This document shows positions 20,680-48,600 of a stretch of 64,000 nucleotides of DNA, piece by piece; position 1 is the first letter of the stretch, and every line of letters begins with the position of its first letter. The translations under genes and the position numbers were made by a program. Location: positions 62,001-126,000 of IMG/VR virus record IMGVR_UViG_3300032242_000723. One strand, written 5' to 3'. The notes beneath the pieces were generated by a model. The model was not told the DNA's origin, did not search any database, and saw only the letters and a list, made by a program, of their open reading frames with translations.

Positions 20680-20877
20680 TTACTTTGCTACGTTTAACTT
20701 AGGCTTGCGAGGGGCACGTGGCTTCTTGATTGCTGCTTCTACGACATCTTCAACAGGAGCCTCAACTGGTGCTACCTTTGCAACTGCTTCTACCTTAGGA
20801 GCCTCAGCAACTGTAGTTACTACAGTAGTAGGCGTAGATGGGAAGATAGCACTTAATAACTTCTTTAGAAATGACAT
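20680..20877 (-). CDS. small Ala/Pro/Lys-rich protein
   Basis: 65-aa ORF with AGGAG RBS and TAAATA motif upstream on minus strand. Confidence 0.55.
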   Translation of the reverse strand: MSFLKKLLSAIFPSTPTTVVTTVAEAPKVEAVAKVAPVEAPVEDVVEAAIKKPRAPRKPKLNVAK

Positions 20878-37562: not shown

Positions 37563-37711
37563 AGAAGCGATTAAGTCAATAGACGGTAGGATAGAATGGT
37601 GTTGGGCCTCAACTCGCATGTTTCTTGAGAATAAAGACGCACATGGAGTTATGGATATGGGTGCAGAACTTCAGTCTTTGCAACGGGCTAAGGCTGAGTT
37701 GGAAAAGTTAT

Positions 37712-38182
37712 ATGAAGCCTAAGTTCATTGAATACTACATGAAGTTTGCAGAGTTGACCAGTACACTGAGTCATGCAAAACGATTGCAGGTTGGTGCCGT
37801 TATTGTCAAGGGTGATAGTCAAATCATCGCTACAGGCTATAACGGTATGCCAACTGGATGGGATAACACCTGCGAAGAAGAGCATGTAGAGTATGTAAGT
37901 TCTGGTTACGGTATGCCCATGAGGGAAGAAACATATCTAAAAACTCGTCCAGAAGTCCTCCACGCGGAGAGCAACGCCATTGCTAAAGTAGCACGATCTA
38001 CTGAATCAAGTGAAGGTGCCACATTGTTCTGTACTCACGCTCCTTGTATGGATTGTGCTAAGTTGATCTATCAGGCTGGTATCTCTACTGTGTACTACAA
38101 GGAAAAGTATCGCGACGAAGGTGGAGTGAAGTTTTTGTGTGAAGGTGGTGTAAGTGTCCATCAGCATCCCGACAGCGTTTAA
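37712..38182 (+). CDS. dCMP deaminase
   Basis: QVGAVIVK, TGYNG.P.G, VLHAESNAI, THAPCMDCAK; start 37712 preferred. Confidence 0.92.
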   Translation: MKPKFIEYYMKFAELTSTLSHAKRLQVGAVIVKGDSQIIATGYNGMPTGWDNTCEEEHVEYVSSGYGMPMREETYLKTRPEVLHAESNAIAKVARSTESSEGATLFCTHAPCMDCAKLIYQAGISTVYYKEKYRDEGGVKFLCEGGVSVHQHPDSV

Positions 38183-38354
38183 GGCTAACATAGATGTTCC
38201 TTACGGAGAACTACAGCCAATAGTTGATTGGTGTGAGCGTAACTGCTCCTCAGAATGGTTCTTCATGGAAGATGCGAACAATCAATGGGGTGGATATGAG
38301 TTTGTATTTGAGTCCGATCGGGACTTCGTAGCGTTTTTATTATGGAACAAGTGA
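38154..38354 (+). CDS. small protein of the LRWS-array family
   Basis: IVDWCERN...GGYEFVFESDRDFVAFLLW. Confidence 0.65.
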   Translation: MSISIPTAFKANIDVPYGELQPIVDWCERNCSSEWFFMEDANNQWGGYEFVFESDRDFVAFLLWNK

Positions 38355-38632
38355 TGAAAGAGTTTCTAATCGTTAGGGCGTCAAACAACTTTGATGATAT
38401 CCTTAAGGATCCTAATCTAAAGAAAAAGTTTAGCGCCATTATGCAGTACAACAACAGTCTCCTCGTGCAGATGGATGAGGATGATAGCATTATATCCTAT
38501 GTGCTGCTAAAGTACGGCGAGGACATTGTTGATTTGAACAGTGCTATCCCTGATAGAACTCCCGTTGCAGGTAAAGATTATGCTATTCAACGGAGAGATG
38601 TCAAGGTACGATTTAGTGCTCGGATAAACTGA
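38354..38632 (+). CDS. hypothetical protein
   Basis: TGATG coupling. Confidence 0.55.
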   Translation: MKEFLIVRASNNFDDILKDPNLKKKFSAIMQYNNSLLVQMDEDDSIISYVLLKYGEDIVDLNSAIPDRTPVAGKDYAIQRRDVKVRFSARIN

Positions 38633-38676
38633 TTTTGGGTATTGACATCATTTGATCTGCATGTTATATATGTAGT

Positions 38677-39210
38677 ATGAAGATTACAGAACTCGCAAAA
38701 AGTAAACCCATCGTTTATGTTGACATGGATGGCGTACTTGCCGACTTGTATGGCTACGCTGCTACCCTGCATGATGTAGCACACTACAACGATATGACTC
38801 CTGATCAATGGGAGAAGTTCTTCAAAGAATCAAATGCATATCATCTGTTCCGCGATATTAGTCCATTTCCCAATGCTAATCAGTTACTACAATCAGTTAA
38901 AGATCAATCTGGTGGATATACCATTCTAAGTAGCCCATTGAACTTTGACCGTGAAGGTAGTATCAAGGGAAAATGTGAGTGGCTCAAGAAGTATATCACT
39001 GTTCCTGCTGATAAACATATCTTTGACCATGAAAAGTACAACTACGCTGTTCAACCTAATGGTACACCTAATATCTTGATTGATGATTACGGTCCAAACA
39101 TTGATGCTTGGAATAAAGCCGGTGGTATTGCTTTGAAGTTCCAAAACGATGAAGATAGTTTAGACACATTGCTCAATAGGTTACAAAAGGCTCTAAAGCA
39201 AGATAAATAA
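38677..39210 (+). CDS. HAD-family 5'(3')-deoxyribonucleotidase-like protein
   Basis: YVDMDGVLAD, ILSSP, GKCEWL, ILIDDY..NI..W..AGG. Confidence 0.85.
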   Translation: MKITELAKSKPIVYVDMDGVLADLYGYAATLHDVAHYNDMTPDQWEKFFKESNAYHLFRDISPFPNANQLLQSVKDQSGGYTILSSPLNFDREGSIKGKCEWLKKYITVPADKHIFDHEKYNYAVQPNGTPNILIDDYGPNIDAWNKAGGIALKFQNDEDSLDTLLNRLQKALKQDK

Positions 39211-39684: not shown

Positions 39685-40320
39685 ATGGCACTCGTATACA
39701 AAATAACCAACTTAGAAAACAAAAAGGTTTACATCGGGTGGACCTCCAAAACGCTTGATCAGCGTTGGAATGCACATGTTCACTGTGCATTGAAAAACCA
39801 AGATAACCGAAAGTTTTATAATGCTATTCGTAAATATAAATTAGAAAGTTGGAAAACAGAAATAATTTGTGAGGTAGAGACAAATGATATCGCCAAGCAA
39901 AAAGAAATAGAATACATTGCCATCTTTGATTCGTATAACAAAGGATACAATGCTACTAAGGGAGGAGATGGTAATAACGGTATAATAATGTCAGCAGAAT
40001 CTAATCTCCGTAGAAGCAAAGCCCTCAAGGGGATTCCTAAATCCGAAGATACTGTACAAAAATTCAAGAACAGAAAATCTACACCTGAAGAAAACCTAAG
40101 GCGGAGTCAATCACATCTTGGTACAAAAAAACCTTGGGTTAAATGGAACAAGGAACAAGTAGCAAAAAGAGCGATGACCAGAAGAAGCCTTACTAAAGAA
40201 CAATTTGATCACATACATCTACTAAGAGACGAAGGATTGTTAATAAGAGAGATTGCTGAAAAGACTAATCTAACTAACGATTTAGTGAAAAAATGGTTGA
40301 AGAGGGTTTGGGATTTATAA
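39685..40320 (+). CDS. GIY-YIG homing endonuclease with NUMOD3-like and HTH-like C-terminus
   Basis: LVYKITN...VYIGWT, RW..H, KEIEYI, GYN.TKGGDG; lacks the 70-nt leader of the other four. Confidence 0.85.
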   Translation: MALVYKITNLENKKVYIGWTSKTLDQRWNAHVHCALKNQDNRKFYNAIRKYKLESWKTEIICEVETNDIAKQKEIEYIAIFDSYNKGYNATKGGDGNNGIIMSAESNLRRSKALKGIPKSEDTVQKFKNRKSTPEENLRRSQSHLGTKKPWVKWNKEQVAKRAMTRRSLTKEQFDHIHLLRDEGLLIREIAEKTNLTNDLVKKWLKRVWDL

Positions 40321-41036: not shown

Positions 41037-41255
41037 ATGAGTAAGGAAAGTGCATTCAAGATGGAGGGTGAGATTATTGATGTTTTGCCCAACGCTACAT
41101 TTAAAGTCAAGTTGATTGAAAGTGATTTGGTTGTGCTTACCTATGTTTCTGGTAAGATGCGTCAGCATGAGATTCGTATTCTCATGGGGGACAAAGTTTC
41201 GGTGGAAATGAGTCCATATGACCTCTCTAGAGGCCGCATCGTTCGCCGCATGTAA
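41037..41255 (+). CDS. infA: translation initiation factor IF-1
   Basis: [21 protein letters not shown]...[23 protein letters not shown]. Confidence 0.95.
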
Positions 41256-41269
41256 CGATAAATACTCTT

Positions 41270-41824
41270 ATGTTAGAGTTTATCAAGGTACTTGAAGGTA
41301 AAAGCAAATCTACTGATTTGGAAATAATCCCACTGAACTTCACCAAGCGTGATGTCTCATCCGTTATGAGCGGAGCAACTCTTGACCTGCATTATGATAA
41401 GTTGGCTAAGGGTTATGCTAAGCGTTATAATGAAAAAGAAGGTGATCCGGACTTCAACTATGCGGGTGCGTTCTTACATAATCTTTGGTTCCCACAGTTT
41501 AGAAAAGTCGCATTAAACAATACACCAAACGGTCCTATGAAGGGCTTCATAGATAAGCACTATGGTTCTTTTGACAGTTTCAAGGACAAGTTTGAAGAGA
41601 TAGCGATGAAGATACAAGGCTCAGGTTGGGTCTATCTTGCTTACGATGGTAACATCAAAACAATCAAGAATCATGAAGTCAAGAGTGACATTCTACTGTT
41701 AGTGGACTGGTGGGAGCACTCGTTTGTGCTGGATTATGGCTCAGACAAAAAGGCCTACTTGCGTAACCTTTGGAAGATCATTAACTGGAATGTGATTTCT
41801 ACCAGGTGGGGCAAGTCACTATGA
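41270..41824 (+). CDS. sod: Fe/Mn superoxide dismutase
   Basis: LHY (His ligand 1), FLHN (His 2), QGSGW, DWWEH (Asp/His ligands). Confidence 0.85.
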   Translation: MLEFIKVLEGKSKSTDLEIIPLNFTKRDVSSVMSGATLDLHYDKLAKGYAKRYNEKEGDPDFNYAGAFLHNLWFPQFRKVALNNTPNGPMKGFIDKHYGSFDSFKDKFEEIAMKIQGSGWVYLAYDGNIKTIKNHEVKSDILLLVDWWEHSFVLDYGSDKKAYLRNLWKIINWNVISTRWGKSL

Positions 41825-43773
41825 GAGCAAAAGAGTTTTTACCAGAAGGTGGTTGGGCAAATCCAGTCACACAAAACACTACGATAACTCCTGCACTTGT
41901 AAAGAATGTGTATGAGAAAGTATTGCCTGTATTCATAAAGAAACTCAATGAGCATCTTAAGTCACAAGATTTGCCTGCCGTTGAACTCGGTAGACCATGT
42001 GGTAGCACGACATACTATGAACGAGACTTATTGAGAGATCCTGAACGCGAATACGGCGACATTGATGTCAACATGTTTATCCCTCGCATCGAAGGTATGA
42101 CCAACAATGCTAATGCTGAGATCATCAAGACACAGATTCGTGACTTCTGTGAGAGTAGCCCAGACTTTCAGACCAGCAATGGTACCAATGTTATCTTCCA
42201 AATAGGGAAAGATTATGTTCAAGTTGACTTGATTACCTCTTATCATCATAATAAAGAGTGGGCTAAAGCATTAGCACCTGAATATCAAGTCAAAGGTGTG
42301 TTATGTAACTCACTATATTCCAGCTTAGGTGAAGCACTACAACTCAGCATTGGTAGTGGACATGGTGTTCAGGCTAAGTTACAAAAAGATAAACTTGTAC
42401 CGTTCAAGACAAGCAAAGATGTTGTATTAAAGACTATCACGAACAATCCAAAAACCTGGGCGATTGATATTGCTAAGTTCTTGGGAGCAAAGAAGATGTC
42501 ACCAACATTAAAGAAGTATCCTGGTATGCTTGATGAGATTCGCGTTGCTGATATTGTCAACTCTATCAAAGGCATTGCCGAATCAATAGACGATAATGAA
42601 CTTGTTGATAAGGTTAAGGACATCTACTTGAAGAAGATTCAAGCGGCAATCAACTCATCAAAGTTTGACAAGGCTGCGAGTGCTGGTGCTATTGAAAAAG
42701 CAAACAAGACTAAAGAAGCATTGGCATCTAAATCGGCACAGATTGCTTCATTGTTTGATAGTACACCGTTGTCCGAAGATATTAAATCATCAGGTATAGG
42801 TGCTAAGATTCAATCTCAGTTAGGATTGAAAGCCTTTTATGTGTATGAGAATGGAGACGATATCGTATTAGATTCGTTGATTGTTGGTAAAGATAAGCAA
42901 GGGCAGGGTTTAGGTAGTCAGGCTATGAAGATGCTGACTGACTATGCTGACCAACATGGTAAACGAATCGTGTTGACTCCTGGTTCAAAAGACAAAATAC
43001 ACGGTACCACTTCTCGCAACAGACTTGTTCGCTTCTATAAACAGTTTGGCTTCAAAGAAAACAAAGGCAGAACCATTGATTACGGAATCGGTGCTGGCAA
43101 GATGTTCCGCGAACCTAAACTAAATGAGATGCCACTACCCGTTGATTGGGATCCCGCTGCATTGGGTGCAGGCAAGACCTTCAAGGATCGCCTACAGTAC
43201 GCCCTAGAGCGTGCTAAGAAGATCGGCACTGGGTCAGCAAGAGTCGCGTTCACGATAGACTTCGAGGGGCGTCCTACAGTCTTGAAGGTGGCAAAAAACA
43301 ATAAGGGTCTGGCACAAAATAATGCTGAACTTGGTATACTAGACGATGGATATACAGGTCAACTGGATATCGTTATCCCACTCATTGACTATGACAAAAA
43401 GAACCCATCACCGATTTGGATTCAAACAGAACTTGCTAAGAAGGTAAATGCTAAACGATTAGCACAACTGTTACATTGCACTGATGTCTATGAGTTTTTT
43501 GATTGTGTTTATGATATCATTACCCCAAGAGCAAAACCAACAGTTCCAAGTCGCCTCGAGCAAACAAAACAACGATTGATCGCTAATGGTAAATCTGAGC
43601 AAGATGCAGAACTATTTGGTGAATATGTAGATGATGTTGTTAGACTATTACACGACTCTACCTTAGAGTTTGGAGACTTGCGTCAAATAGCTAACTGGGG
43701 CGAATATCAGGGTAGACCAGTTATCATTGATCTTGGCTTTACTGAAGAAACAAAACATCTTTACGGGCACTAG
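41821..43773 (+). CDS. three-module protein: Pol-beta-type nucleotidyltransferase + GNAT acetyltransferase + kinase-like domain
   Basis: GS...GDIDV...VDL; QGQGLGS..M...RLVRFY..FGF; IGTGSARV, VLKVAK, DL...NWG, IIDLGF. Confidence 0.75.
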   Translation: MRAKEFLPEGGWANPVTQNTTITPALVKNVYEKVLPVFIKKLNEHLKSQDLPAVELGRPCGSTTYYERDLLRDPEREYGDIDVNMFIPRIEGMTNNANAEIIKTQIRDFCESSPDFQTSNGTNVIFQIGKDYVQVDLITSYHHNKEWAKALAPEYQVKGVLCNSLYSSLGEALQLSIGSGHGVQAKLQKDKLVPFKTSKDVVLKTITNNPKTWAIDIAKFLGAKKMSPTLKKYPGMLDEIRVADIVNSIKGIAESIDDNELVDKVKDIYLKKIQAAINSSKFDKAASAGAIEKANKTKEALASKSAQIASLFDSTPLSEDIKSSGIGAKIQSQLGLKAFYVYENGDDIVLDSLIVGKDKQGQGLGSQAMKMLTDYADQHGKRIVLTPGSKDKIHGTTSRNRLVRFYKQFGFKENKGRTIDYGIGAGKMFREPKLNEMPLPVDWDPAALGAGKTFKDRLQYALERAKKIGTGSARVAFTIDFEGRPTVLKVAKNNKGLAQNNAELGILDDGYTGQLDIVIPLIDYDKKNPSPIWIQTELAKKVNAKRLAQLLHCTDVYEFFDCVYDIITPRAKPTVPSRLEQTKQRLIANGKSEQDAELFGEYVDDVVRLLHDSTLEFGDLRQIANWGEYQGRPVIIDLGFTEETKHLYGH

Positions 43774-44112
43774 ATGATAAATACTGATATGATCACATTA
43801 ACAGTATCAGCACAAAATAAAGTCGCTAAGGTGCTAGCAGAAGAAATACCAAATGCAAGACTTAGACTATATGTCTCTGGCAAAGGTTGTGCTGGGATGA
43901 CATATGGCTTTGCTATAGCAGAAGAACTTGAAGAAGGTGATACTGAGATTCAATCAGGTCCAGTTGTCGTAGTGATTGATCCAGAATCAATGCCCTATTT
44001 AAAAGGTGCAATCGTTGATTTTAAAGAGGATTTAACTGGTTCTCGCTTTGCTATAATCAACCCTAATGCCAAGTCCAGTTGTGGTTGCGGAGATAGTTTC
44101 CAGCCTTATTGA
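43774..44112 (+). CDS. iscA: A-type Fe-S carrier (IscA/ErpA, HesB family)
   Basis: GKGCAGMTY, VDF, NPNAKSSCGCGDSF. Confidence 0.9.
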   Translation: MINTDMITLTVSAQNKVAKVLAEEIPNARLRLYVSGKGCAGMTYGFAIAEELEEGDTEIQSGPVVVVIDPESMPYLKGAIVDFKEDLTGSRFAIINPNAKSSCGCGDSFQPY

Positions 44113-44135
44113 TAAATACATCATAAGGACTGAAA

Positions 44136-45254
44136 ATGAGTATATCTGGCAAACAAACAATCAACATTGGCTTACCTAACGAGTCAGTAGGTAGCGATTC
44201 ATTATACACGGCTTTCACAAAGTCACAAACCAACTTTGACACACTTTTTGCATGTGCAAGTCCATATAGTACATTCACTGCTGGTAATGGTATAAATGTC
44301 AACGCTAACTCATCAACTGGCATCGTATCAATAACTAACTCTGGTGTGACAAACATCATTGCTGGTACAAACATCGTTGTCAGCAATGCGAACGGTAATG
44401 TGACTATCTCGTCAACAGGCGGTGGCGGTAGCGGTGGCGGCGGGACAGTCACAAGCGTCGGTGTAACACCAGTGTCAACTGATCGTCTAACCACTACAGG
44501 CTCCCCTGTCATATCATCTGGCAATATTAATATCGATCTTGCTGTAATCGCAAACATCACTCCTGCAACCTATACTAATCCAAATGTAACGATAGATGCA
44601 TATGGTAGAGTAACTGCGGTAAGCAATGGTTCAAGTGCCGGCTCTGTTACAAGTGTAGGATTGACTCCAGGTACTGGTATTCAAATCAACGGTGGACCAA
44701 TCACATCTAACGGAAACATCACTGTAACGAACATCGGTGTGACTCGCGTAACTGCTGGTACTGGTATCTTGGTGTCAGGTAGTAATGGAAATGTTACGAT
44801 CTCTTCAACTTCGTCAGGTGGTACGGTTACTGCGGTTGGAGTATCAAGTGGCTCACTCGTAGTCAGCGGAAGTCCAGTTGTAAACTCTGGTACAATCGTA
44901 GTTGACTTGCCTACATCTGCAACTTTCACCGGATCACTCACTGCGAACACAATGTTCTTACCAGGTAGTCAAGATTTGGCAACAGGTACCGCTGCTAATC
45001 TCGCAGTTACAGCAAGTTACTTTACGACTACGGGTGCAAGCACTGCTACTCTTGCTGCCGGTACTGCTGGCTTGATCAAGACATTCATGATGGTAGCTGA
45101 CGGTGGTGACATGGTTATTACTGTAACTAACGCAGGCTGGAAGACATCTGGTACTGGCACGATCACATTTAACGATATAGGTGATGGCTGCACATTACAA
45201 TACATTAATAGTAAGTGGTATGCAATTGGCATCAACGGCGTAGTCTTCGCATAA
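44136..45254 (+). CDS. baseplate/tail-fibre-like structural protein with Gly/Thr/Val repeats
   Basis: N-terminus KQTINIG.PN...SD.L..AF.K...NF..L resembles T4 gp9/gp10-type starts; three VT[SA]VG repeats; TTGATAAATA upstream. Confidence 0.65.
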   Translation: MSISGKQTINIGLPNESVGSDSLYTAFTKSQTNFDTLFACASPYSTFTAGNGINVNANSSTGIVSITNSGVTNIIAGTNIVVSNANGNVTISSTGGGGSGGGGTVTSVGVTPVSTDRLTTTGSPVISSGNINIDLAVIANITPATYTNPNVTIDAYGRVTAVSNGSSAGSVTSVGLTPGTGIQINGGPITSNGNITVTNIGVTRVTAGTGILVSGSNGNVTISSTSSGGTVTAVGVSSGSLVVSGSPVVNSGTIVVDLPTSATFTGSLTANTMFLPGSQDLATGTAANLAVTASYFTTTGASTATLAAGTAGLIKTFMMVADGGDMVITVTNAGWKTSGTGTITFNDIGDGCTLQYINSKWYAIGINGVVFA

Positions 45255-45273
45255 GAATAATAGGAACACGAGT

Positions 45274-46662
45274 ATGATTGACAGCATTAAAATCACGAGC
45301 CTGACTAATATCGGGCCAAACATCGCGTATAATACGGTTTTTCCGCTAGTCAATACTGCTGGTACACCTGTCACTCAAAAAGGCAATCTTCAGATAATCG
45401 GTAATGTGATTCTCAATGGTGCCGGTGGTGCATATTTTCCACCAGCGGCACAAGCTGTTCTTGCTCAATCAGTAACCAATGCTGCACAACCTAACATCAC
45501 CAGCGTAGGTACTCTTACGAGTCTTAACATAAGCGGAAGAGCCAATTTAGGTAGTGTCGCTAACGTTGCTATCTTAGGTGGAGTTAACGGTCAATATATA
45601 CAAACTGATGGTACTGGCAATCTTGCGTGGGTATCAGGTGGCGGTTCTGGTAACGGCGTTGTTGGTGGTGCAAACACTCAGATTCAGTTTAACAACAGTG
45701 GATCATTTGGCGGTACTACTGGATTAGTTTGGTCAGCTAGTAACACAACGCTTGTCACAACAAACATTGCTGCTGGTACTGTTAAGACAGACAACTATAA
45801 ATACGCAAACGGTGCGACATTCAATGGTACATATAGCAACGCCAATGTAACTGCTTACTTGCCTACATATCTCGGTAATGTTGGTGCAAATACTATCATT
45901 GGTGCAGGCAATCTCAAACTTCAACCAAATGTAGCGAACAGTGATGCATATTTAGACATTTATTTGACTACAGGGCCAGATATTCACATTGCAAGCAACA
46001 GCGAGAATCTAATTTTGGGTCGTGATGGTACTGCTAATGTGACAATTGGTGTCAACGGTACTGTTTCTATTCAAGCAACTACAGGTACTTCGCATGTTTG
46101 GACATTCGGAGCTGATGGTACATTAAACTTACCAGAATCATCAAGTGTAGGTAATTCAATAATACAAACAACTAGTAATATTCAGTTAAATTCTAACAGT
46201 AATACATGGACATTCGGATCTGATGGTAACTTGACACTGCCTGGTGATCTTAAGTCAATACACATGACATCATTGGGTGCTAATGGTCCTGAGATTCAAG
46301 GCGATACCGGTGCTAGTGGGGCAGTGTATGTTCGTGCTAACGCAACAAATGATATGACTGGTCTTCATTTGGACAACGATACAGATGCAATATTATATGG
46401 TAATAGTAATGTAGTTCTTCGTGCTGGTGGACCGGGTGGGCAGGAATTTATATTTAATGAAGCTGGACTCGCATCGGCGATTGCCTTCAAATCATCACCG
46501 AGTCCCTTAGCTGACCTTCAGTTTCCGGGACAGCCCGGCTTACGAGCATTCATCAATGACGCTAACTTAGTAGCAGCAGGAAACTTCGGTGAAATCGTTG
46601 GTGATGGTGGATCAAATGTTGTTCCTATCTTCTATGACGGTACAAACTGGCGGATCGGATAA
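45274..46662 (+). CDS. tail-fibre-like structural protein
   Basis: AQPNITSVGTL, GGANTQIQFNNSG.FGG, WTFG.DG.L.LP repeats. Confidence 0.65.
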   Translation: MIDSIKITSLTNIGPNIAYNTVFPLVNTAGTPVTQKGNLQIIGNVILNGAGGAYFPPAAQAVLAQSVTNAAQPNITSVGTLTSLNISGRANLGSVANVAILGGVNGQYIQTDGTGNLAWVSGGGSGNGVVGGANTQIQFNNSGSFGGTTGLVWSASNTTLVTTNIAAGTVKTDNYKYANGATFNGTYSNANVTAYLPTYLGNVGANTIIGAGNLKLQPNVANSDAYLDIYLTTGPDIHIASNSENLILGRDGTANVTIGVNGTVSIQATTGTSHVWTFGADGTLNLPESSSVGNSIIQTTSNIQLNSNSNTWTFGSDGNLTLPGDLKSIHMTSLGANGPEIQGDTGASGAVYVRANATNDMTGLHLDNDTDAILYGNSNVVLRAGGPGGQEFIFNEAGLASAIAFKSSPSPLADLQFPGQPGLRAFINDANLVAAGNFGEIVGDGGSNVVPIFYDGTNWRIG

Positions 46663-46695
46663 CATTAACCATTAACAAAAATAAGGAAAAACATA

Positions 46696-48600
46696 ATGGC
46701 GATAAGTAACAAACCACAACAAGTAGGACTATCAGACCCTCACTTAGTTAGACAAGAGAATAATAAACTTGCACAAGATGCACTTATCGCTAAGGGCAAG
46801 CCAACCATAATTGGTGAAACGGCTGTTCTTCCTAGCACAACTGTATCAGCGACTCCGACCTCAGTTACTGCTACAACAAGTGCTAATAATCAAGTAGCAG
46901 ATACTACGACCGTATATCAAACGAATGGTGCCGTGTATGTCAGCACGATCAATGAGACCATACAACAAGTTACTAATAAGAACATCGTAAATCAGATTGG
47001 CGTAACCAATATCGTTGCAGGTACTAACGTTACTATCACTTCAACTGATGGTAATGGTGCTGGAACTGTTACTATCAATGCAACTGCCCCAACTCTTGGC
47101 AACATCTCAGTCATCAACTTAGACGGTAATGGTTCTAATGTTCTACATGGTAACGGGTATTGGAGTCCAGACCTAACTACATATAGCAACAGCAATGTAG
47201 TCTCATTGATGGCAGCGTTCGGTTCAAACACAATCGTTACTACTGGTAATGCAAATGTTGGCAATCTCATATCAACTGGTGTAGTAAAAGTATCAGGTGC
47301 ATCGGCTTATTTTGACGCAGGTGTTGGTTATATTCAAAACGGTGGCATGGGAGAATTTCAACTTAGTACTGCTGGTGCGACTCAACCACTTCAAATCAGC
47401 ACTAATAGTGCAAGCAAGAACTGGTTCTTCTATGCTAATGGTAAAATGACTGCACCAGGCAACATCGCTGCTAGTTATTTTATCGGCAACGGTAGTCAAC
47501 TAACTAGTTTACCGGCTCCAACGGTGGCACAAGATATTACCACTACTGGTGATATGAGTATAATGACCTATGATGGTAATCTAAAATATGTATCCTATGC
47601 TACAGTTGAACCCTCTTCAGGTAATCTAAAAGCCGGAAACATCAGTACCAATGGCAATATCACCGGTGGTAACTTGATGGGTCCTCTTGCAAATGGCAAC
47701 TCAAATGTTCGCATTGCTACAGCAAATGGAAATGTAACAATAACCGCAGTTGGTAATACGACTATGACTATTTCTGGTACTGGGGCGAACATCACTGGTA
47801 CAGCGAATGTCACAGGTAATGCGAATGTCGGTAACTTGGGTACTGCAACAGCGATCATCACAACTGGTAACATCACTACCATCAACAGCGGATTGCTACA
47901 AAACGGTACATCAAATGTAACGATCACGTCGGGTGCTAACATCTCTACCTTTATCGGTGGTAACGCGACTGCACAATTTATCGTAACAGCAACTGGTGCA
48001 AATATCGCAGGCTATGCTAACATAGTTGGTAACGTCACTGTTAGTAACTTAATAGGTCCTCATGCAAATGGTAACTCAAACGTTAATATTCCCGCTGCAA
48101 ACGGCAACGTTAATATTTCTGCTGTAGGTAATGCGAACATACTGGTCGTCACTGGAACTGGCGCCAACATCACTGGTACCGCAAACGTTTCTGGCAATGC
48201 TAACGTGGGTAACATCGGTGCTTTTAACGGTGTGTTCAGTAACAACATTTCAGGTAATACGAACGGATTTGCTATCGGTTACTTGAACATCCCACAAGTT
48301 GCTGCAAGTAATACTACAATCGCATTGACTGATGCTGGTAAACATTACTATTCTACTACCGCAGGTAACTTTACATTGACTATTCCGGCTAATGCAACTA
48401 CATCATTCGCTACTGGTACAGCAATCAGTATCGTTGTTCAAGCGGCGGGCAATATTCTCGTCAATGCAGCAGTTGGGGTAACATTATATATGGCAGGTAA
48501 CAGTACAGCAGCAAATAGAGCAGTTGGTACTTATGGCATGGCAACGGTGATGAAGGTTGCGACTGATACTTGGTTCATCAACGGTACGGGAGTCTCTTAA
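46696..48600 (+). CDS. tail-fibre-like structural protein with GNANVGN repeats
   Basis: Duplicated GP.ANGNSNV.I..ANGNV.I.AVGN...GTGANITGTANV.GNANVGN blocks. Confidence 0.65.
   Translation: MAISNKPQQVGLSDPHLVRQENNKLAQDALIAKGKPTIIGETAVLPSTTVSATPTSVTATTSANNQVADTTTVYQTNGAVYVSTINETIQQVTNKNIVNQIGVTNIVAGTNVTITSTDGNGAGTVTINATAPTLGNISVINLDGNGSNVLHGNGYWSPDLTTYSNSNVVSLMAAFGSNTIVTTGNANVGNLISTGVVKVSGASAYFDAGVGYIQNGGMGEFQLSTAGATQPLQISTNSASKNWFFYANGKMTAPGNIAASYFIGNGSQLTSLPAPTVAQDITTTGDMSIMTYDGNLKYVSYATVEPSSGNLKAGNISTNGNITGGNLMGPLANGNSNVRIATANGNVTITAVGNTTMTISGTGANITGTANVTGNANVGNLGTATAIITTGNITTINSGLLQNGTSNVTITSGANISTFIGGNATAQFIVTATGANIAGYANIVGNVTVSNLIGPHANGNSNVNIPAANGNVNISAVGNANILVVTGTGANITGTANVSGNANVGNIGAFNGVFSNNISGNTNGFAIGYLNIPQVAASNTTIALTDAGKHYYSTTAGNFTLTIPANATTSFATGTAISIVVQAAGNILVNAAVGVTLYMAGNSTAANRAVGTYGMATVMKVATDTWFINGTGVS

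What the first reader, a model, noticed from the sequence alone, without database searches (positions are those of the whole stretch)
41821..43773. Nucleotidyltransferase-GNAT-kinase fusion that looks like a virion polyprotein
Seen: three modifying-enzyme modules in one ORF (about 41821-42777, 42778-43128, 43129-43773); the N-terminus MRAKEFLPE and the linkers PLSE-D and KLNE-M each place an L-x-E at a module start. Other late ORFs begin similarly (MLEFIKVLE, MRDILEKLETLSE). Established: T4 internal proteins use the targeting peptide MKTYQEFIAE and are cut by the prohead protease after [LI]-x-E; T4 injects the modifying enzyme Alt. Inference: a packaged precursor processed into three injected enzymes that nucleotidylate, acetylate and phosphorylate host targets at the start of infection.
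Basis: partly seen in the sequence, partly recalled or inferred. Interest (0 to 1): 0.7.

Follow-up and report, generated by a model that had tools for sequence, protein, structure and literature searches.

The report
Capsid-targeted three-enzyme phage polyprotein
A freshwater jumbo phage with T4-type head genes encodes one 650-residue protein made of three enzymes (a nucleotidyltransferase, an acetyltransferase and a mini-kinase); it carries a T4-like capsid-targeting leader and a conserved protease-type cut site before each enzyme, so it is most likely packed into the phage head, cut into three and injected, though nobody has shown this directly for this phage.

Summary
The ORF (41821-43773, 650 aa) is real and has three independent modules. 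They are a Pol-beta-fold nucleotidyltransferase (aa 10-313), a small GNAT (aa 320-433) and a minimal protein-kinase-like domain (aa 437-650). The total number of [LI]xE motifs is not above chance. Their positions are: across about 80 N-module and 110 kinase-module homologues, the residues just before the module are [LIV]-x-E in about 95-99% of sequences, in stretches the models leave unstructured. Nearly all homologues, whatever domain comes first, begin with M-[RK]-x-x-[ED]-[FI]-[IL]-x-E. This resembles the T4 capsid-targeting sequence and the T4 gp24 propeptide. The genome (333 kb, uncultivated) has T4-type portal, gp21 protease, scaffold and gp23 genes, and 11 ORFs carry the leader (0.16 expected). 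The same GNAT inside giant proteins of four small phages without this protease lacks the motif. In Agrobacterium phage Atu_ph07, a leader-GNAT-X homologue (gp63, 41.4 kDa) is a virion protein that peaks in the 26-31 kDa gel band, as expected after cleavage. Packaging and processing are therefore well supported by comparison but not shown for this phage. The substrates are unknown. This is a new variant of two known themes, T4 internal proteins and polyvalent proteins.

The parts
41821..43773 (+). Whole ORF, 650 aa, 72.3 kDa precursor
   Evidence: Independent gene calls on relatives start at the same Met (P0001, P0002).
41821..41847 (+). N-terminal leader MRAKEFLPE (aa 1-9). It is a putative capsid-targeting propeptide, with a predicted cut after E9.
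   Evidence: The same M[RK]xx[ED][FI][IL]xE leader is on 142 of 258 homologues and 11 ORFs of the genome, against 0.16 expected. It is unstructured in the model (residues 1-11 have pLDDT below 50). It resembles the T4 CTS MKTYQEFIAE (PMC8442874) and the T4 gp24 start MAKINELLRE.
41848..42759 (+). N module (aa 10-313): a Pol-beta-fold nucleotidyltransferase that starts with invariant GGW
   Evidence: G10, G11, G61, S62, D80, D82 and D136 are invariant in 82 sequences. The AF2 model has pLDDT 92.5. Structure matches are PolX/Pol beta/mu/lambda at Z 9-9.7 and one AFDB family cluster at TM 0.78. There is no Pfam hit.
42760..42777 (+). Junction 1 (aa 314-319, ending L-S-E), with a predicted cut after E319
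   Evidence: [LI]xE precedes 15 of 16 copies of this GNAT in relatives. It aligns with the N-terminal leader LLE of Atu_ph07 gp63. It is the cassette-swap breakpoint in P0002.
42778..43119 (+). GNAT acetyltransferase module (aa 320-433), a short form with a QGQGLG acetyl-CoA motif
   Evidence: Pfam PF00583 and PF13508 are above their cut-offs. It matches phrog_10691 at positions 2655-2800 of a 3925-position profile. It is homologous to GNATs inside DarB-like/PLxRFG giant proteins.
43120..43128 (+). Junction 2 (aa 434-436, L-N-E), with a predicted cut after E436
   Evidence: P3 is L/I/V in 109 of 110 sequences and P1 is E in 109 of 110. PKLNE has pLDDT below 50. The motif is absent after the homologous GNAT in four phages that lack the S77 protease.
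43129..43770 (+). C module (aa 437-650): a minimal protein-kinase-like domain that starts with MPLPxDWD
   Evidence: G469, G471, K489, E503, D619, N625 and D637 are invariant. The AF2 model has pLDDT 91.4. Foldseek matches APH(4), APH(2''), Rio2 and eukaryotic-type kinases. It matches phrog_4301. It is a stand-alone gene in XacN1, Xoo-sp13 and Alishewanella phages.
41257..41264 (+). GATAAATA, a T4-late-promoter-like motif 5 nt upstream of the SOD-like ORF that heads the operon (tentative)
   Evidence: 54 of 120 genomic NATAAATA copies lie within 40 nt upstream of an ORF start. The sequence was read. Timing of expression was not tested.

Best explanation
The gene encodes a head-internal (ejection) polyprotein of a T4-core jumbo phage.

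Inferred mechanism, step by step:
- The 9-residue leader targets the precursor to the scaffolding core of the prohead, as the T4 capsid-targeting sequence does.
- The phage's gp21-type prohead protease then cuts after Glu in [LIV]-x-E at aa 9, 319 and 436.
- This removes the leader and releases three enzymes of about 34, 13 and 24 kDa: a Pol-beta-fold nucleotidyltransferase, a GNAT acetyltransferase and a mini-kinase.
- The enzymes stay in the DNA-filled head and enter the host with the DNA, where they act before any phage gene is expressed.

Fusing several cargo domains behind one leader lets them all be packaged. The leader and the junction motifs form a grammar that allows cassettes to be exchanged by recombination.

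Shown here: the module identities, the conserved leader and junction motifs, the T4-type head and protease genes, and the link between motif and protease across genomes.

Inferred: targeting, cleavage, injection and the substrates.
For: 1. Junction conservation. Before GGW, P3 is L/I/V in 74 of 78 sequences and P1 is E in 77 of 78. Before MPLPxDWD, the figures are 109 of 110 and 109 of 110 (raw views). 15 of 16 GNAT copies have [LI]xE just upstream. The background frequency is 1.5% per position.
2. The motif residues lie in low-confidence, unstructured stretches of otherwise very confident models.
3. The leader does not depend on the first domain. 142 of 258 homologues carry it. 11 ORFs in this genome carry it, against 0.16 +/- 0.42 in shuffles. 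Codons vary synonymously, so selection acts on the peptide.
4. T4 likeness. The EF[IL]xE core and its spacing match the T4 CTS (PMC8442874). The leaders MKINELLNE and MRINELLNE resemble the T4 gp24 propeptide MAKINELLRE. T4 gp21 cuts after L/I-x-E, and the 10-19-residue CTS propeptides target cargo to the core (PMC9026906; PMC5694885).
5. The genome has T4-type Portal_T4 (6e-103), S77 protease (1.4e-26; 34% identical to gp21, with the HP and GVSSRG motifs kept), a scaffold rich in LxE, and Gp23 (1.4e-97) with LAE just before the mature-like N-terminus.
6. Motif and protease occur together. 5 of 5 related 259-372-kb phage genomes have the protease, and 4 of 5 have 2-6 exact leaders, against 0 in the control. 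The homologous GNAT in four small phages without the protease has no [LI]xE at either end.
7. A natural leaderless N-module gene starts exactly at the predicted cut (M-GGW, with an in-frame stop 5 codons upstream and no other start codon).
8. Cassette swap. P0002 is 98% identical in the N module and 93% identical in the kinase module, but has an unrelated middle domain inserted exactly between the two junction Glu residues.
9. Experiment in a relative. Atu_ph07 gp63 consists of the leader MRLFQLLE, a GNAT 44% identical to the query's (E 8e-19) and a further domain after ITE. It is in the virion proteome (13 peptides, 39% coverage). It peaks in gel band 8 with the 26-31 kDa proteins, not in band 5 with the 40-41 kDa proteins. 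The predicted C-terminal fragment is 28.0 kDa.
Against: - There are no proteomic or expression data for this uncultivated phage.
- The gene lies about 70 kb from the head module, next to IF-1-, SOD- and IscA-like genes.
- The total [LI]xE count is at chance level.
- The motifs directly abut invariant module-start motifs (GGW; PLPxDWD), so part of their conservation could be structural.
- P2 is Pro in this protein's leader (FLPE), and one homologue (P0009) has N instead of E at P1.
- T4 internal proteins are cut only once (PMC8442874). Internal cutting between folded enzyme domains is an extrapolation.
- The Atu_ph07 evidence is a gel-band position and not a mapped cleavage. Only the GNAT is significantly homologous; the NTase-like gp65 match is not significant (E 0.11 and 0.046).
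- A protease-peptide co-fold gave no answer.
Confidence: 0.65

Rival explanations
1. The protein is packaged through the leader but stays one polyvalent protein. Only the N-terminal leader, or nothing, is removed, and the three domains are injected as a single tri-functional polypeptide, like P1 DarB or the N4 virion RNA polymerase. The junction motifs would then be linker or module-start features kept by cassette recombination.
For: Polyvalent proteins that combine GNAT, kinase, Pol-beta NTase and ART domains are described as injected multi-domain proteins (PMC5512222). T4 internal proteins are cut once. The same GNAT works inside uncleaved-looking giant proteins.
Against: This reading does not explain why P3-hydrophobic and P1-Glu are nearly invariant in unstructured linkers only in phages that have the S77 protease. 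Atu_ph07 gp63 runs at the size of its C-terminal fragment.
Confidence: 0.15
2. The protein is not a virion protein. It is a cytoplasmic multi-enzyme, an auxiliary or anti-defence factor. The conserved N-terminus would be a translation-initiation or recombination signature shared by a paralogous gene set.
For: The neighbouring genes are metabolic-looking (IF-1-, SOD- and IscA-like). Several leader genes are translationally coupled, with ATGA overlaps. There are no direct virion data.
Against: Synonymous codon variation in the leaders argues for selection on the peptide. The same [LIV]xE grammar recurs internally, where translation initiation is irrelevant. The leader closely resembles the propeptides of T4 gp24 and the internal proteins. 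The homologues gp61-65 of Atu_ph07 are in virions.
Confidence: 0.08
3. This rival concerns function and is compatible with packaging. The trio would act on a small molecule rather than on host proteins, as an ANT/AAC/APH-like set that inactivates an aminoglycoside-type compound. Aminoglycoside-modifying enzymes belong to the same three fold classes, and bifunctional AAC-APH and ANT-AAC fusions exist in bacteria (own knowledge).
For: The best Foldseek hits of the C module are APH(4)-Ia, APH(2'')-IVa and APH(3')-IIIa. The N module has a Pol-beta fold, as ANT enzymes do.
Against: TM-scores are low (0.3-0.4), and Rio2 and eukaryotic-type kinases score equally well. The C module lacks the large substrate-binding lobe. 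NCBIfam, which holds the resistance-enzyme models, gives no hit (best E 0.025, to RimI). The N module aligns best to PolX palm plus thumb. The modules shuffle independently with unrelated partners.
Confidence: 0.05

Closest known systems
T4 internal proteins IPI/IPII/IPIII, Alt and gp24: head proteins with a capsid-targeting propeptide removed by the gp21 prohead protease
   Same: Both have a short N-terminal leader with an EF[IL]xE core that ends in [LI]-x-Glu. The genome has gp21-type protease, gp20, gp22-like and gp23 genes in T4 order. The cargo varies widely behind a constant leader. Alt is an injected modifying enzyme.
   Different: The cargo here is a chain of three enzymes separated by internal cut-site motifs. 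T4 cargo is a single small basic protein cut once. The leader is 9 residues rather than 10, and Val is tolerated at P3. There are about 11 leader proteins per genome. Nothing has been shown experimentally for this phage.
Polyvalent proteins of phages and conjugative elements (Iyer, Burroughs, Anand, de Souza, Aravind 2017; PMC5512222)
   Same: Several conflict-type enzyme domains sit in one polypeptide, from exactly the listed classes (GNAT, truncated kinase, Pol-beta NTase). The protein is phage-encoded and predicted to be injected. The GNAT is homologous to GNATs inside DarB-like and PLxRFG giant proteins.
   Different: Described polyvalent proteins are processed, if at all, by their own metallopeptidase domains. 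Here there is no peptidase domain. Release is predicted to depend on the head-maturation protease acting on conserved inter-domain [LIV]xE sites, which the small-phage polyvalent proteins lack. The NTase and kinase families also differ from those described: the paper's are a firmicute minimal NTase and a Verrucomicrobia/Bacteroidetes kinase.
Ejection and inner-body proteins of phiKZ, 201phi2-1 and SPN3US, processed by gp175/gp245 (diverged gp21 homologues)
   Same: These are giant phages with many head-internal paralogues that are cut after Glu at a 3-residue motif, sometimes at several sites per protein (PMC9026906; PMC5694885).
   Different: Their motif is S/A/G-x-E and their propeptides are over 100 residues long. 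Those proteins are mostly of unknown function and are not chains of recognisable enzymes. The present phage has a canonical T4-type head module.
Agrobacterium phage Atu_ph07 gp63 (AUZ94875) and its neighbours gp55-65
   Same: gp63 combines the leader MRLFQLLE, a homologous GNAT (44% identity) and a second domain after I-T-E. It has been detected in virions. The phage has a gp21 homologue.
   Different: gp63 has two modules rather than three, and its second module is a different, unnamed family. The authors did not analyse processing; cleavage is my reading of their gel-band table.

Membership tests
T4-type capsid-targeted, gp21-processed head-internal proteins | Short N-terminal propeptide (about 10-20 aa) that ends in [LI]-x-Glu | tested here: met
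   MRAKEFLPE has L7-x-E9. The same leader is found on 142 of 258 homologues and on 11 ORFs of the genome.
T4-type capsid-targeted, gp21-processed head-internal proteins | The genome encodes a gp21 (Peptidase_S77) prohead protease together with a T4-type portal, scaffold and gp23 | tested here: met
   PF03420 at 1.4e-26, 34% identical to T4 gp21. PF07230 at 6e-103. PF07068 at 1.4e-97.
T4-type capsid-targeted, gp21-processed head-internal proteins | The protein is present in purified virions | not testable with these tools
   The phage is an uncultivated freshwater phage. The only evidence is the homologue Atu_ph07 gp63, which is in a virion proteome.
T4-type capsid-targeted, gp21-processed head-internal proteins | Cleavage after the motif Glu is demonstrated | not testable with these tools
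   Indirect evidence only: conservation, a leaderless natural variant that starts at the predicted cut, and the gel position of gp63. The co-fold with the protease gave no answer.
T4-type capsid-targeted, gp21-processed head-internal proteins | Late expression together with the head genes | tested here: inconclusive
   A GATAAATA motif heads the operon and shows a strong positional bias genome-wide. Its temporal class is unknown. The exact TATAAATA is not enriched in the window.
Polyvalent proteins (Iyer et al. 2017) | Two or more conflict-type effector domains in one polypeptide of a phage or conjugative element, with variable architectures | tested here: met
   There are three enzyme domains. 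Relatives show 21 architectures.
Polyvalent proteins (Iyer et al. 2017) | Genomic linkage to virion, packaging or transfer genes | tested here: inconclusive
   Tail-fibre-like repeat ORFs lie downstream (44136-48600) but have no family hit. The upstream genes are IF-1- and SOD-like.
Pol-beta superfamily nucleotidyltransferases | G[SG] ... DxD ... D catalytic motif on the Pol-beta palm fold | tested here: met
   G61, S62, D80, D82 and D136 are invariant. The fold matches PolX/Pol beta at Z 9-9.7 over about 170 residues. There is no Pfam model hit, so this is a family of its own within the superfamily (AFDB cluster at TM 0.78).
GNAT acetyltransferases | Pfam GNAT models above their gathering scores, plus the Q/RxxGxG/A acetyl-CoA motif | tested here: met
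   PF00583 scores 29.5 against 20.7, and PF13508 scores 27.8 against 27. QGQGLG is read directly in the sequence.
Protein-kinase-like superfamily | Gly-rich loop, VAIK-type Lys, Glu of helix C, catalytic D..N, DFG-type Asp, and a bilobal fold | tested here: met
   All these residues are invariant in 111 sequences. The fold matches APH, Rio2 and eukaryotic-type kinases with probability 1.0 but TM of only 0.3-0.44. No Pfam kinase model hits, so membership holds at superfamily level only.
Aminoglycoside-modifying enzymes (ANT/AAC/APH) | A match to curated resistance-enzyme models | tested here: not met
   NCBIfam gives no such hit. The best hits are RimI and ArsN at E of 0.025 or worse, far below their cut-offs.

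The most novel reading that the evidence does not exclude
The leader and the [LIV]-x-E junctions form a general plug-and-play grammar in T4-core jumbo phages. Any domain placed behind a junction is carried into the head by the single N-terminal leader and is freed by the maturation protease. Cleavage would also act as zymogen activation: the enzymes would need the free N-termini it creates (Gly-Gly-Trp...; Met-Pro-Leu-Pro...). They would therefore be inert in the producing cell and armed only inside the capsid. If so, the injected effector repertoire of uncultivated jumbo phages could be read directly from sequence.
Probability: 0.2. Interest if true: 0.85.

Novelty: new variant of a known kind. 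Interest (0 to 1): 0.68.

Why it matters
Which phage proteins travel with the DNA into the cell is hard to learn without virion proteomics, and for uncultivated giant phages it is unknown. If the 9-residue leader and the inter-domain [LIV]-x-E sites mean what they mean in T4, they give a sequence-only rule for listing the injected enzymes of a large group of freshwater jumbo phages. In this genome there would be about 11: four kinases, nucleotidyltransferase-like proteins, an acetyltransferase, a GH19 wall hydrolase and two domains of unknown function. The rule would also explain why these enzymes are so often fused and so freely shuffled. It would join two separately described ideas, T4 capsid-targeting sequences and polyvalent proteins, through one mechanism. 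It would also offer a natural multi-cargo version of the T4 packaging tag used in phage engineering.

Tried and rejected
- A megablast of the region against 50,697 phage records found nothing.
- PDB sequence-profile searches for the N and C modules found nothing usable.
- A co-fold of the phage protease with the 26-residue junction-2 peptide gave no answer and is not used as evidence either way.
- A read-laying joint at 42780->43126, exactly the GNAT borders, looked like a natural GNAT-less variant in run X2. I rejected it because its side is only 26 letters and the same 401-nt contig also lays end to end at 94% identity.
- P0232 first looked like a leaderless kinase module that starts at the cut site. 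Its upstream frame is open for 33 codons, ends in P-L-F-E and has no start codon, so it may be a broken fusion. I dropped it. The leaderless N-module gene P0138 did hold up.
- Homology of the N module to the Atu_ph07 virion protein gp65 rests on shared motifs only (GG.A..TQ, GS, GDIDVNM, VQ.DL). It is not significant (E 0.11 by BLASTP, 0.046 by hhalign), so it is not counted.
- The exact T4 late promoter TATAAATA is not enriched in the window (4 found against 4.4 expected). Only the looser NATAAATA shows a positional bias.
- tblastn of the leader-bearing GH19 protein gave only generic endolysin hits and no link to the virion chitinase of XacN1. The XacN1 paper text does not list ORF170.
- The scan of bacterial genomes found the kinase module on only three MAG contigs. 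Two carry the leader and one distant copy does not.
Full report
**What is there.**

The window is bases 62001-126000 of a single 333,115-bp virus record. CheckV puts it at 92% complete. Freshwater and aquatic metagenomes hold it.

The ORF runs from ATG 41821 to the stop at 43771-43773 and encodes 650 aa. Its ATG overlaps the stop codon of the upstream SOD-like ORF. A GATAAATA motif lies 5 nt before that ORF.

Of the three parts, Pfam sees only a GNAT, at aa 335-428. PHROGs places the GNAT at positions 2655-2800 of a 3925-position profile of giant phage proteins. It places aa 432-645 in a family of unknown function.

**Three modules, freely shuffled.**

Two protein searches (117 and over 3,400 hits) and a local BLAST map show three units that occur independently. 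These are N (q1-313), G (q317-432) and C (q431-648).

Among 257 relatives the main architectures are x-C (97), x-N (51), C alone (40) and N alone (31). G-C, C-G, C-C, G-N and N-C also occur. N-G-C is found only in a 94%-identical relative.

P0002 is 98% identical in the N module and 93% identical in the C module. Its middle domain is unrelated by BLAST and is inserted exactly between the two junction Glu residues.

**Module identities.**

The N-module alignment (82 sequences) has invariant G61-S62, D80, D82 and D136, the Pol-beta nucleotidyltransferase signature. Its AF2 model (pLDDT 92.5) matches family-X polymerases over palm and thumb at Z 9-9.7. In AFDB it has a single own-family cluster (TM 0.78). 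ESM Atlas neighbours are all viral and include DUF6267 proteins.

The C-module alignment (111 sequences) keeps the Gly-loop, K489, E503, D619, N625 and D637. Its model (pLDDT 91.4) matches aminoglycoside phosphotransferases, Rio2 and eukaryotic-type kinases with high probability but low TM. It is therefore a minimal kinase-like domain.

There are no PDB relatives by sequence. No curated NCBIfam family matches, including the resistance-enzyme models.

**The L-x-E observation.**

The protein has seven [LI]xE motifs, against 6.1 +/- 2.2 in shuffles, so the number itself means nothing. The positions do.

- In every N-module copy the residues before the invariant GGW are [LIV]-x-E (P3 L/I/V in 74 of 78, P1 Glu in 77 of 78).
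- In every C-module copy the residues before [MAV]PLPxDWD are [LIV]-x-E (109 of 110 for each position).
- 15 of 16 GNAT copies have [LI]xE a few residues upstream.
- The background frequency is 1.5% per position.
- In the models these residues are the only low-confidence stretches: aa 1-11, and PKLNE at aa 432-436.

**A shared leader.**

Whatever domain comes first, most relatives start with M-[RK]-x-x-[ED]-[FI]-[IL]-x-E. This holds for 142 of the 254 proteins that begin with Met.

This genome has 11 such ORFs, against 0.16 +/- 0.42 in shuffles, with a maximum of 2. Besides the query they are:
- three tandem mini-kinases of the T7 gp0.7-like PHROG
- a DUF6267 protein
- a DUF6934 protein
- a GH19 wall hydrolase
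- four proteins without a family

Their codons differ synonymously, so the conservation is in the peptide.

**Likeness to T4.**

The published T4 capsid-targeting sequence is MKTYQEFIAE (PMC8442874). T4 gp24 in the T4 record starts MAKINELLRE, and gp23 has ...FLTE before its mature end. Leaders here read MRAKEFLPE, MRANEFITE, MKINELLNE and MRINELLNE.

T4 gp21 cuts after L/I-x-E, and propeptides of 10-19 residues target cargo to the scaffolding core (PMC9026906; PMC5694885).

The present genome carries, in T4 order:
- a T4-type portal
- an acidic gp67/68-like protein
- a 212-aa S77 protease, 34% identical to gp21
- a scaffold full of LxE
- a Gp23-family capsid protein with L-A-E before its mature-like N-terminus
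- a homing endonuclease
- the three leader-bearing kinases

**Controls that separate a cut site from a part of the fold.**

1. The same GNAT (32-55% identical) sits inside giant DarB-like, PLxRFG or methylase-annotated proteins of four 53-63-kb phages. None has [LI]xE at either border, and none of those genomes has the S77 protease. Atu_ph07 has it.
2. Five of five related 259-372-kb phage genomes have the protease. Four of them have 2-6 exact MRAxEF[IL]xE starts, against none for the reversed pattern.
3. Five stand-alone N-module proteins start M-GGW. For the one I checked, an in-frame stop lies five codons upstream and there is no alternative start. The module therefore does not need the three residues.
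4. The query's internal L-S-E aligns with the N-terminal leader L-L-E of Atu_ph07 gp63.

**Experimental link.**

Atu_ph07 is a cultured T4-core jumbo phage whose gp204 is a gp21 homologue (Table S3). Its gp63 (AUZ94875, 362 aa, 41.40 kDa) has three parts: the leader MRLFQLLE, a GNAT 44% identical to the query's (E 8e-19), and a domain of the gp61/62 family that follows I-T-E.

In the published virion proteome gp63 has 13 unique peptides and 39% coverage. It is most abundant in gel band 8. The 26-31-kDa proteins peak there, whereas proteins of 40-41 kDa peak in band 5. The predicted C-terminal fragment is 28.0 kDa and the GNAT fragment 12.4 kDa. gp63 was also seen in the smallest bands.

This reading is mine, not the authors'. 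gp61, 62, 64 and 65 are virion proteins too.

**Interpretation.**

The best explanation is a capsid-targeted polyprotein that the prohead protease cuts at aa 9, 319 and 436 into enzymes of 34.2, 13.0 and 24.1 kDa. These would then be ejected with the DNA.

Against this:
- There are no direct data for this phage.
- The gene neighbourhood looks metabolic.
- The leader has Pro at P2.
- One homologue lacks the Glu.
- T4 internal proteins are cut only once.
- The motifs abut invariant module starts.

Rivals are uncut packaging as a classical polyvalent protein (PMC5512222), a cytoplasmic enzyme, and a small-molecule-modifying trio. The last is compatible with packaging but unsupported by family models. 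The substrates are unknown. The PolX-like shape of the N module hints at nucleic-acid ends rather than proteins, but Z values of 9-10 are only modestly above noise.

**Novelty.**

I found no paper describing this leader, or protease-site-delimited enzyme cassettes, in T4-core jumbo phages. The searches were made, and the jumbo-phage survey PMC7824862. The library is incomplete, so this is absence of evidence only. I rate the finding a new variant of known kinds (T4 CTS cargo and polyvalent proteins).

Noticed in passing
window 41037-41255, 41270-41824, 43774-44112: The polyprotein is flanked by a phage IF-1 homologue (PF01176, 1.2e-21), an Fe/Mn-superoxide-dismutase-like protein with a good C-terminal but weak N-terminal domain, and an IscA-type Fe-S assembly protein. 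Relatives also keep an eIF-1a/IF-1 gene nearby (L100).
   Followed up: partly
genome G000:C1:174187-175903 (minus strand; L004:4187-5903), outside the window: There are three tandem 187-192-aa mini-kinases (phrog_15752, T7 gp0.7-like, 2.8e-14), each with the leader MRI[NT]E[LI][IL]xE and a second V-L-D-E site. They lie directly after the capsid gene and an HNH/NUMOD3 homing endonuclease, which is where T4 has segD and gp24.
   Followed up: partly
whole genome; e.g. window 41257-41264 and upstream of window 44136: The NATAAATA motif (mostly GATAAATA) is a promoter-like motif. 54 of 120 copies lie within 40 nt upstream of an ORF start, often only 4-5 nt from the ATG, which would give nearly leaderless mRNAs. 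Most leader-bearing genes either carry the motif directly (genome 44547, 175328) or lie downstream of a gene that does (28780, 36861/38126, the query at 103821, 275136/275552). For 43142 the nearest motif-bearing start is 39902, and the link was not checked.
   Followed up: partly
window 44136-48600: Three large ORFs (372, 462 and 634 aa) are rich in Gly/Asn/Thr/Ser repeats such as GNGNVTISS. They look like tail fibres but hit no Pfam or PHROG family. A similar 468-aa ORF lies next to the head module (L004:1789-3195).
   Followed up: no
genome G000:C1:28780-29898, 38126-38968, 43142-44440 (L007): Other leader-bearing ORFs carry DUF6267 (structurally close to the N module), DUF6934 (a frequent N-terminal partner of the kinase module in relatives) and a GH19 chitinase/lysozyme domain. 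XacN1 is reported to pack a chitinase in its virions.
   Followed up: partly
The ORF also has an upstream ATG at 20871.
   Followed up: partly
window 43522-43567 and 43764-43789 (contig of run X4): A relative about 94% identical keeps all three modules. It replaces 44 letters with 83 inside the variable insert of the kinase, and has 495 extra letters between the end of the polyprotein and the IscA-like gene. This could be a fourth module or an extra small gene.
   Followed up: no
L100:1402-1500 (upstream of P0232): A kinase-module gene called from Met-Pro-Leu-Pro has 33 open in-frame codons upstream that end in P-L-F-E and contain no start codon. This suggests a frameshifted or broken x-kinase fusion.
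   Followed up: partly
window 39685-40320 and 37625-38182: By eye, one ORF looks like a GIY-YIG-type homing endonuclease and the other like a dCMP deaminase (translations). Neither was tested against family models.
   Followed up: no
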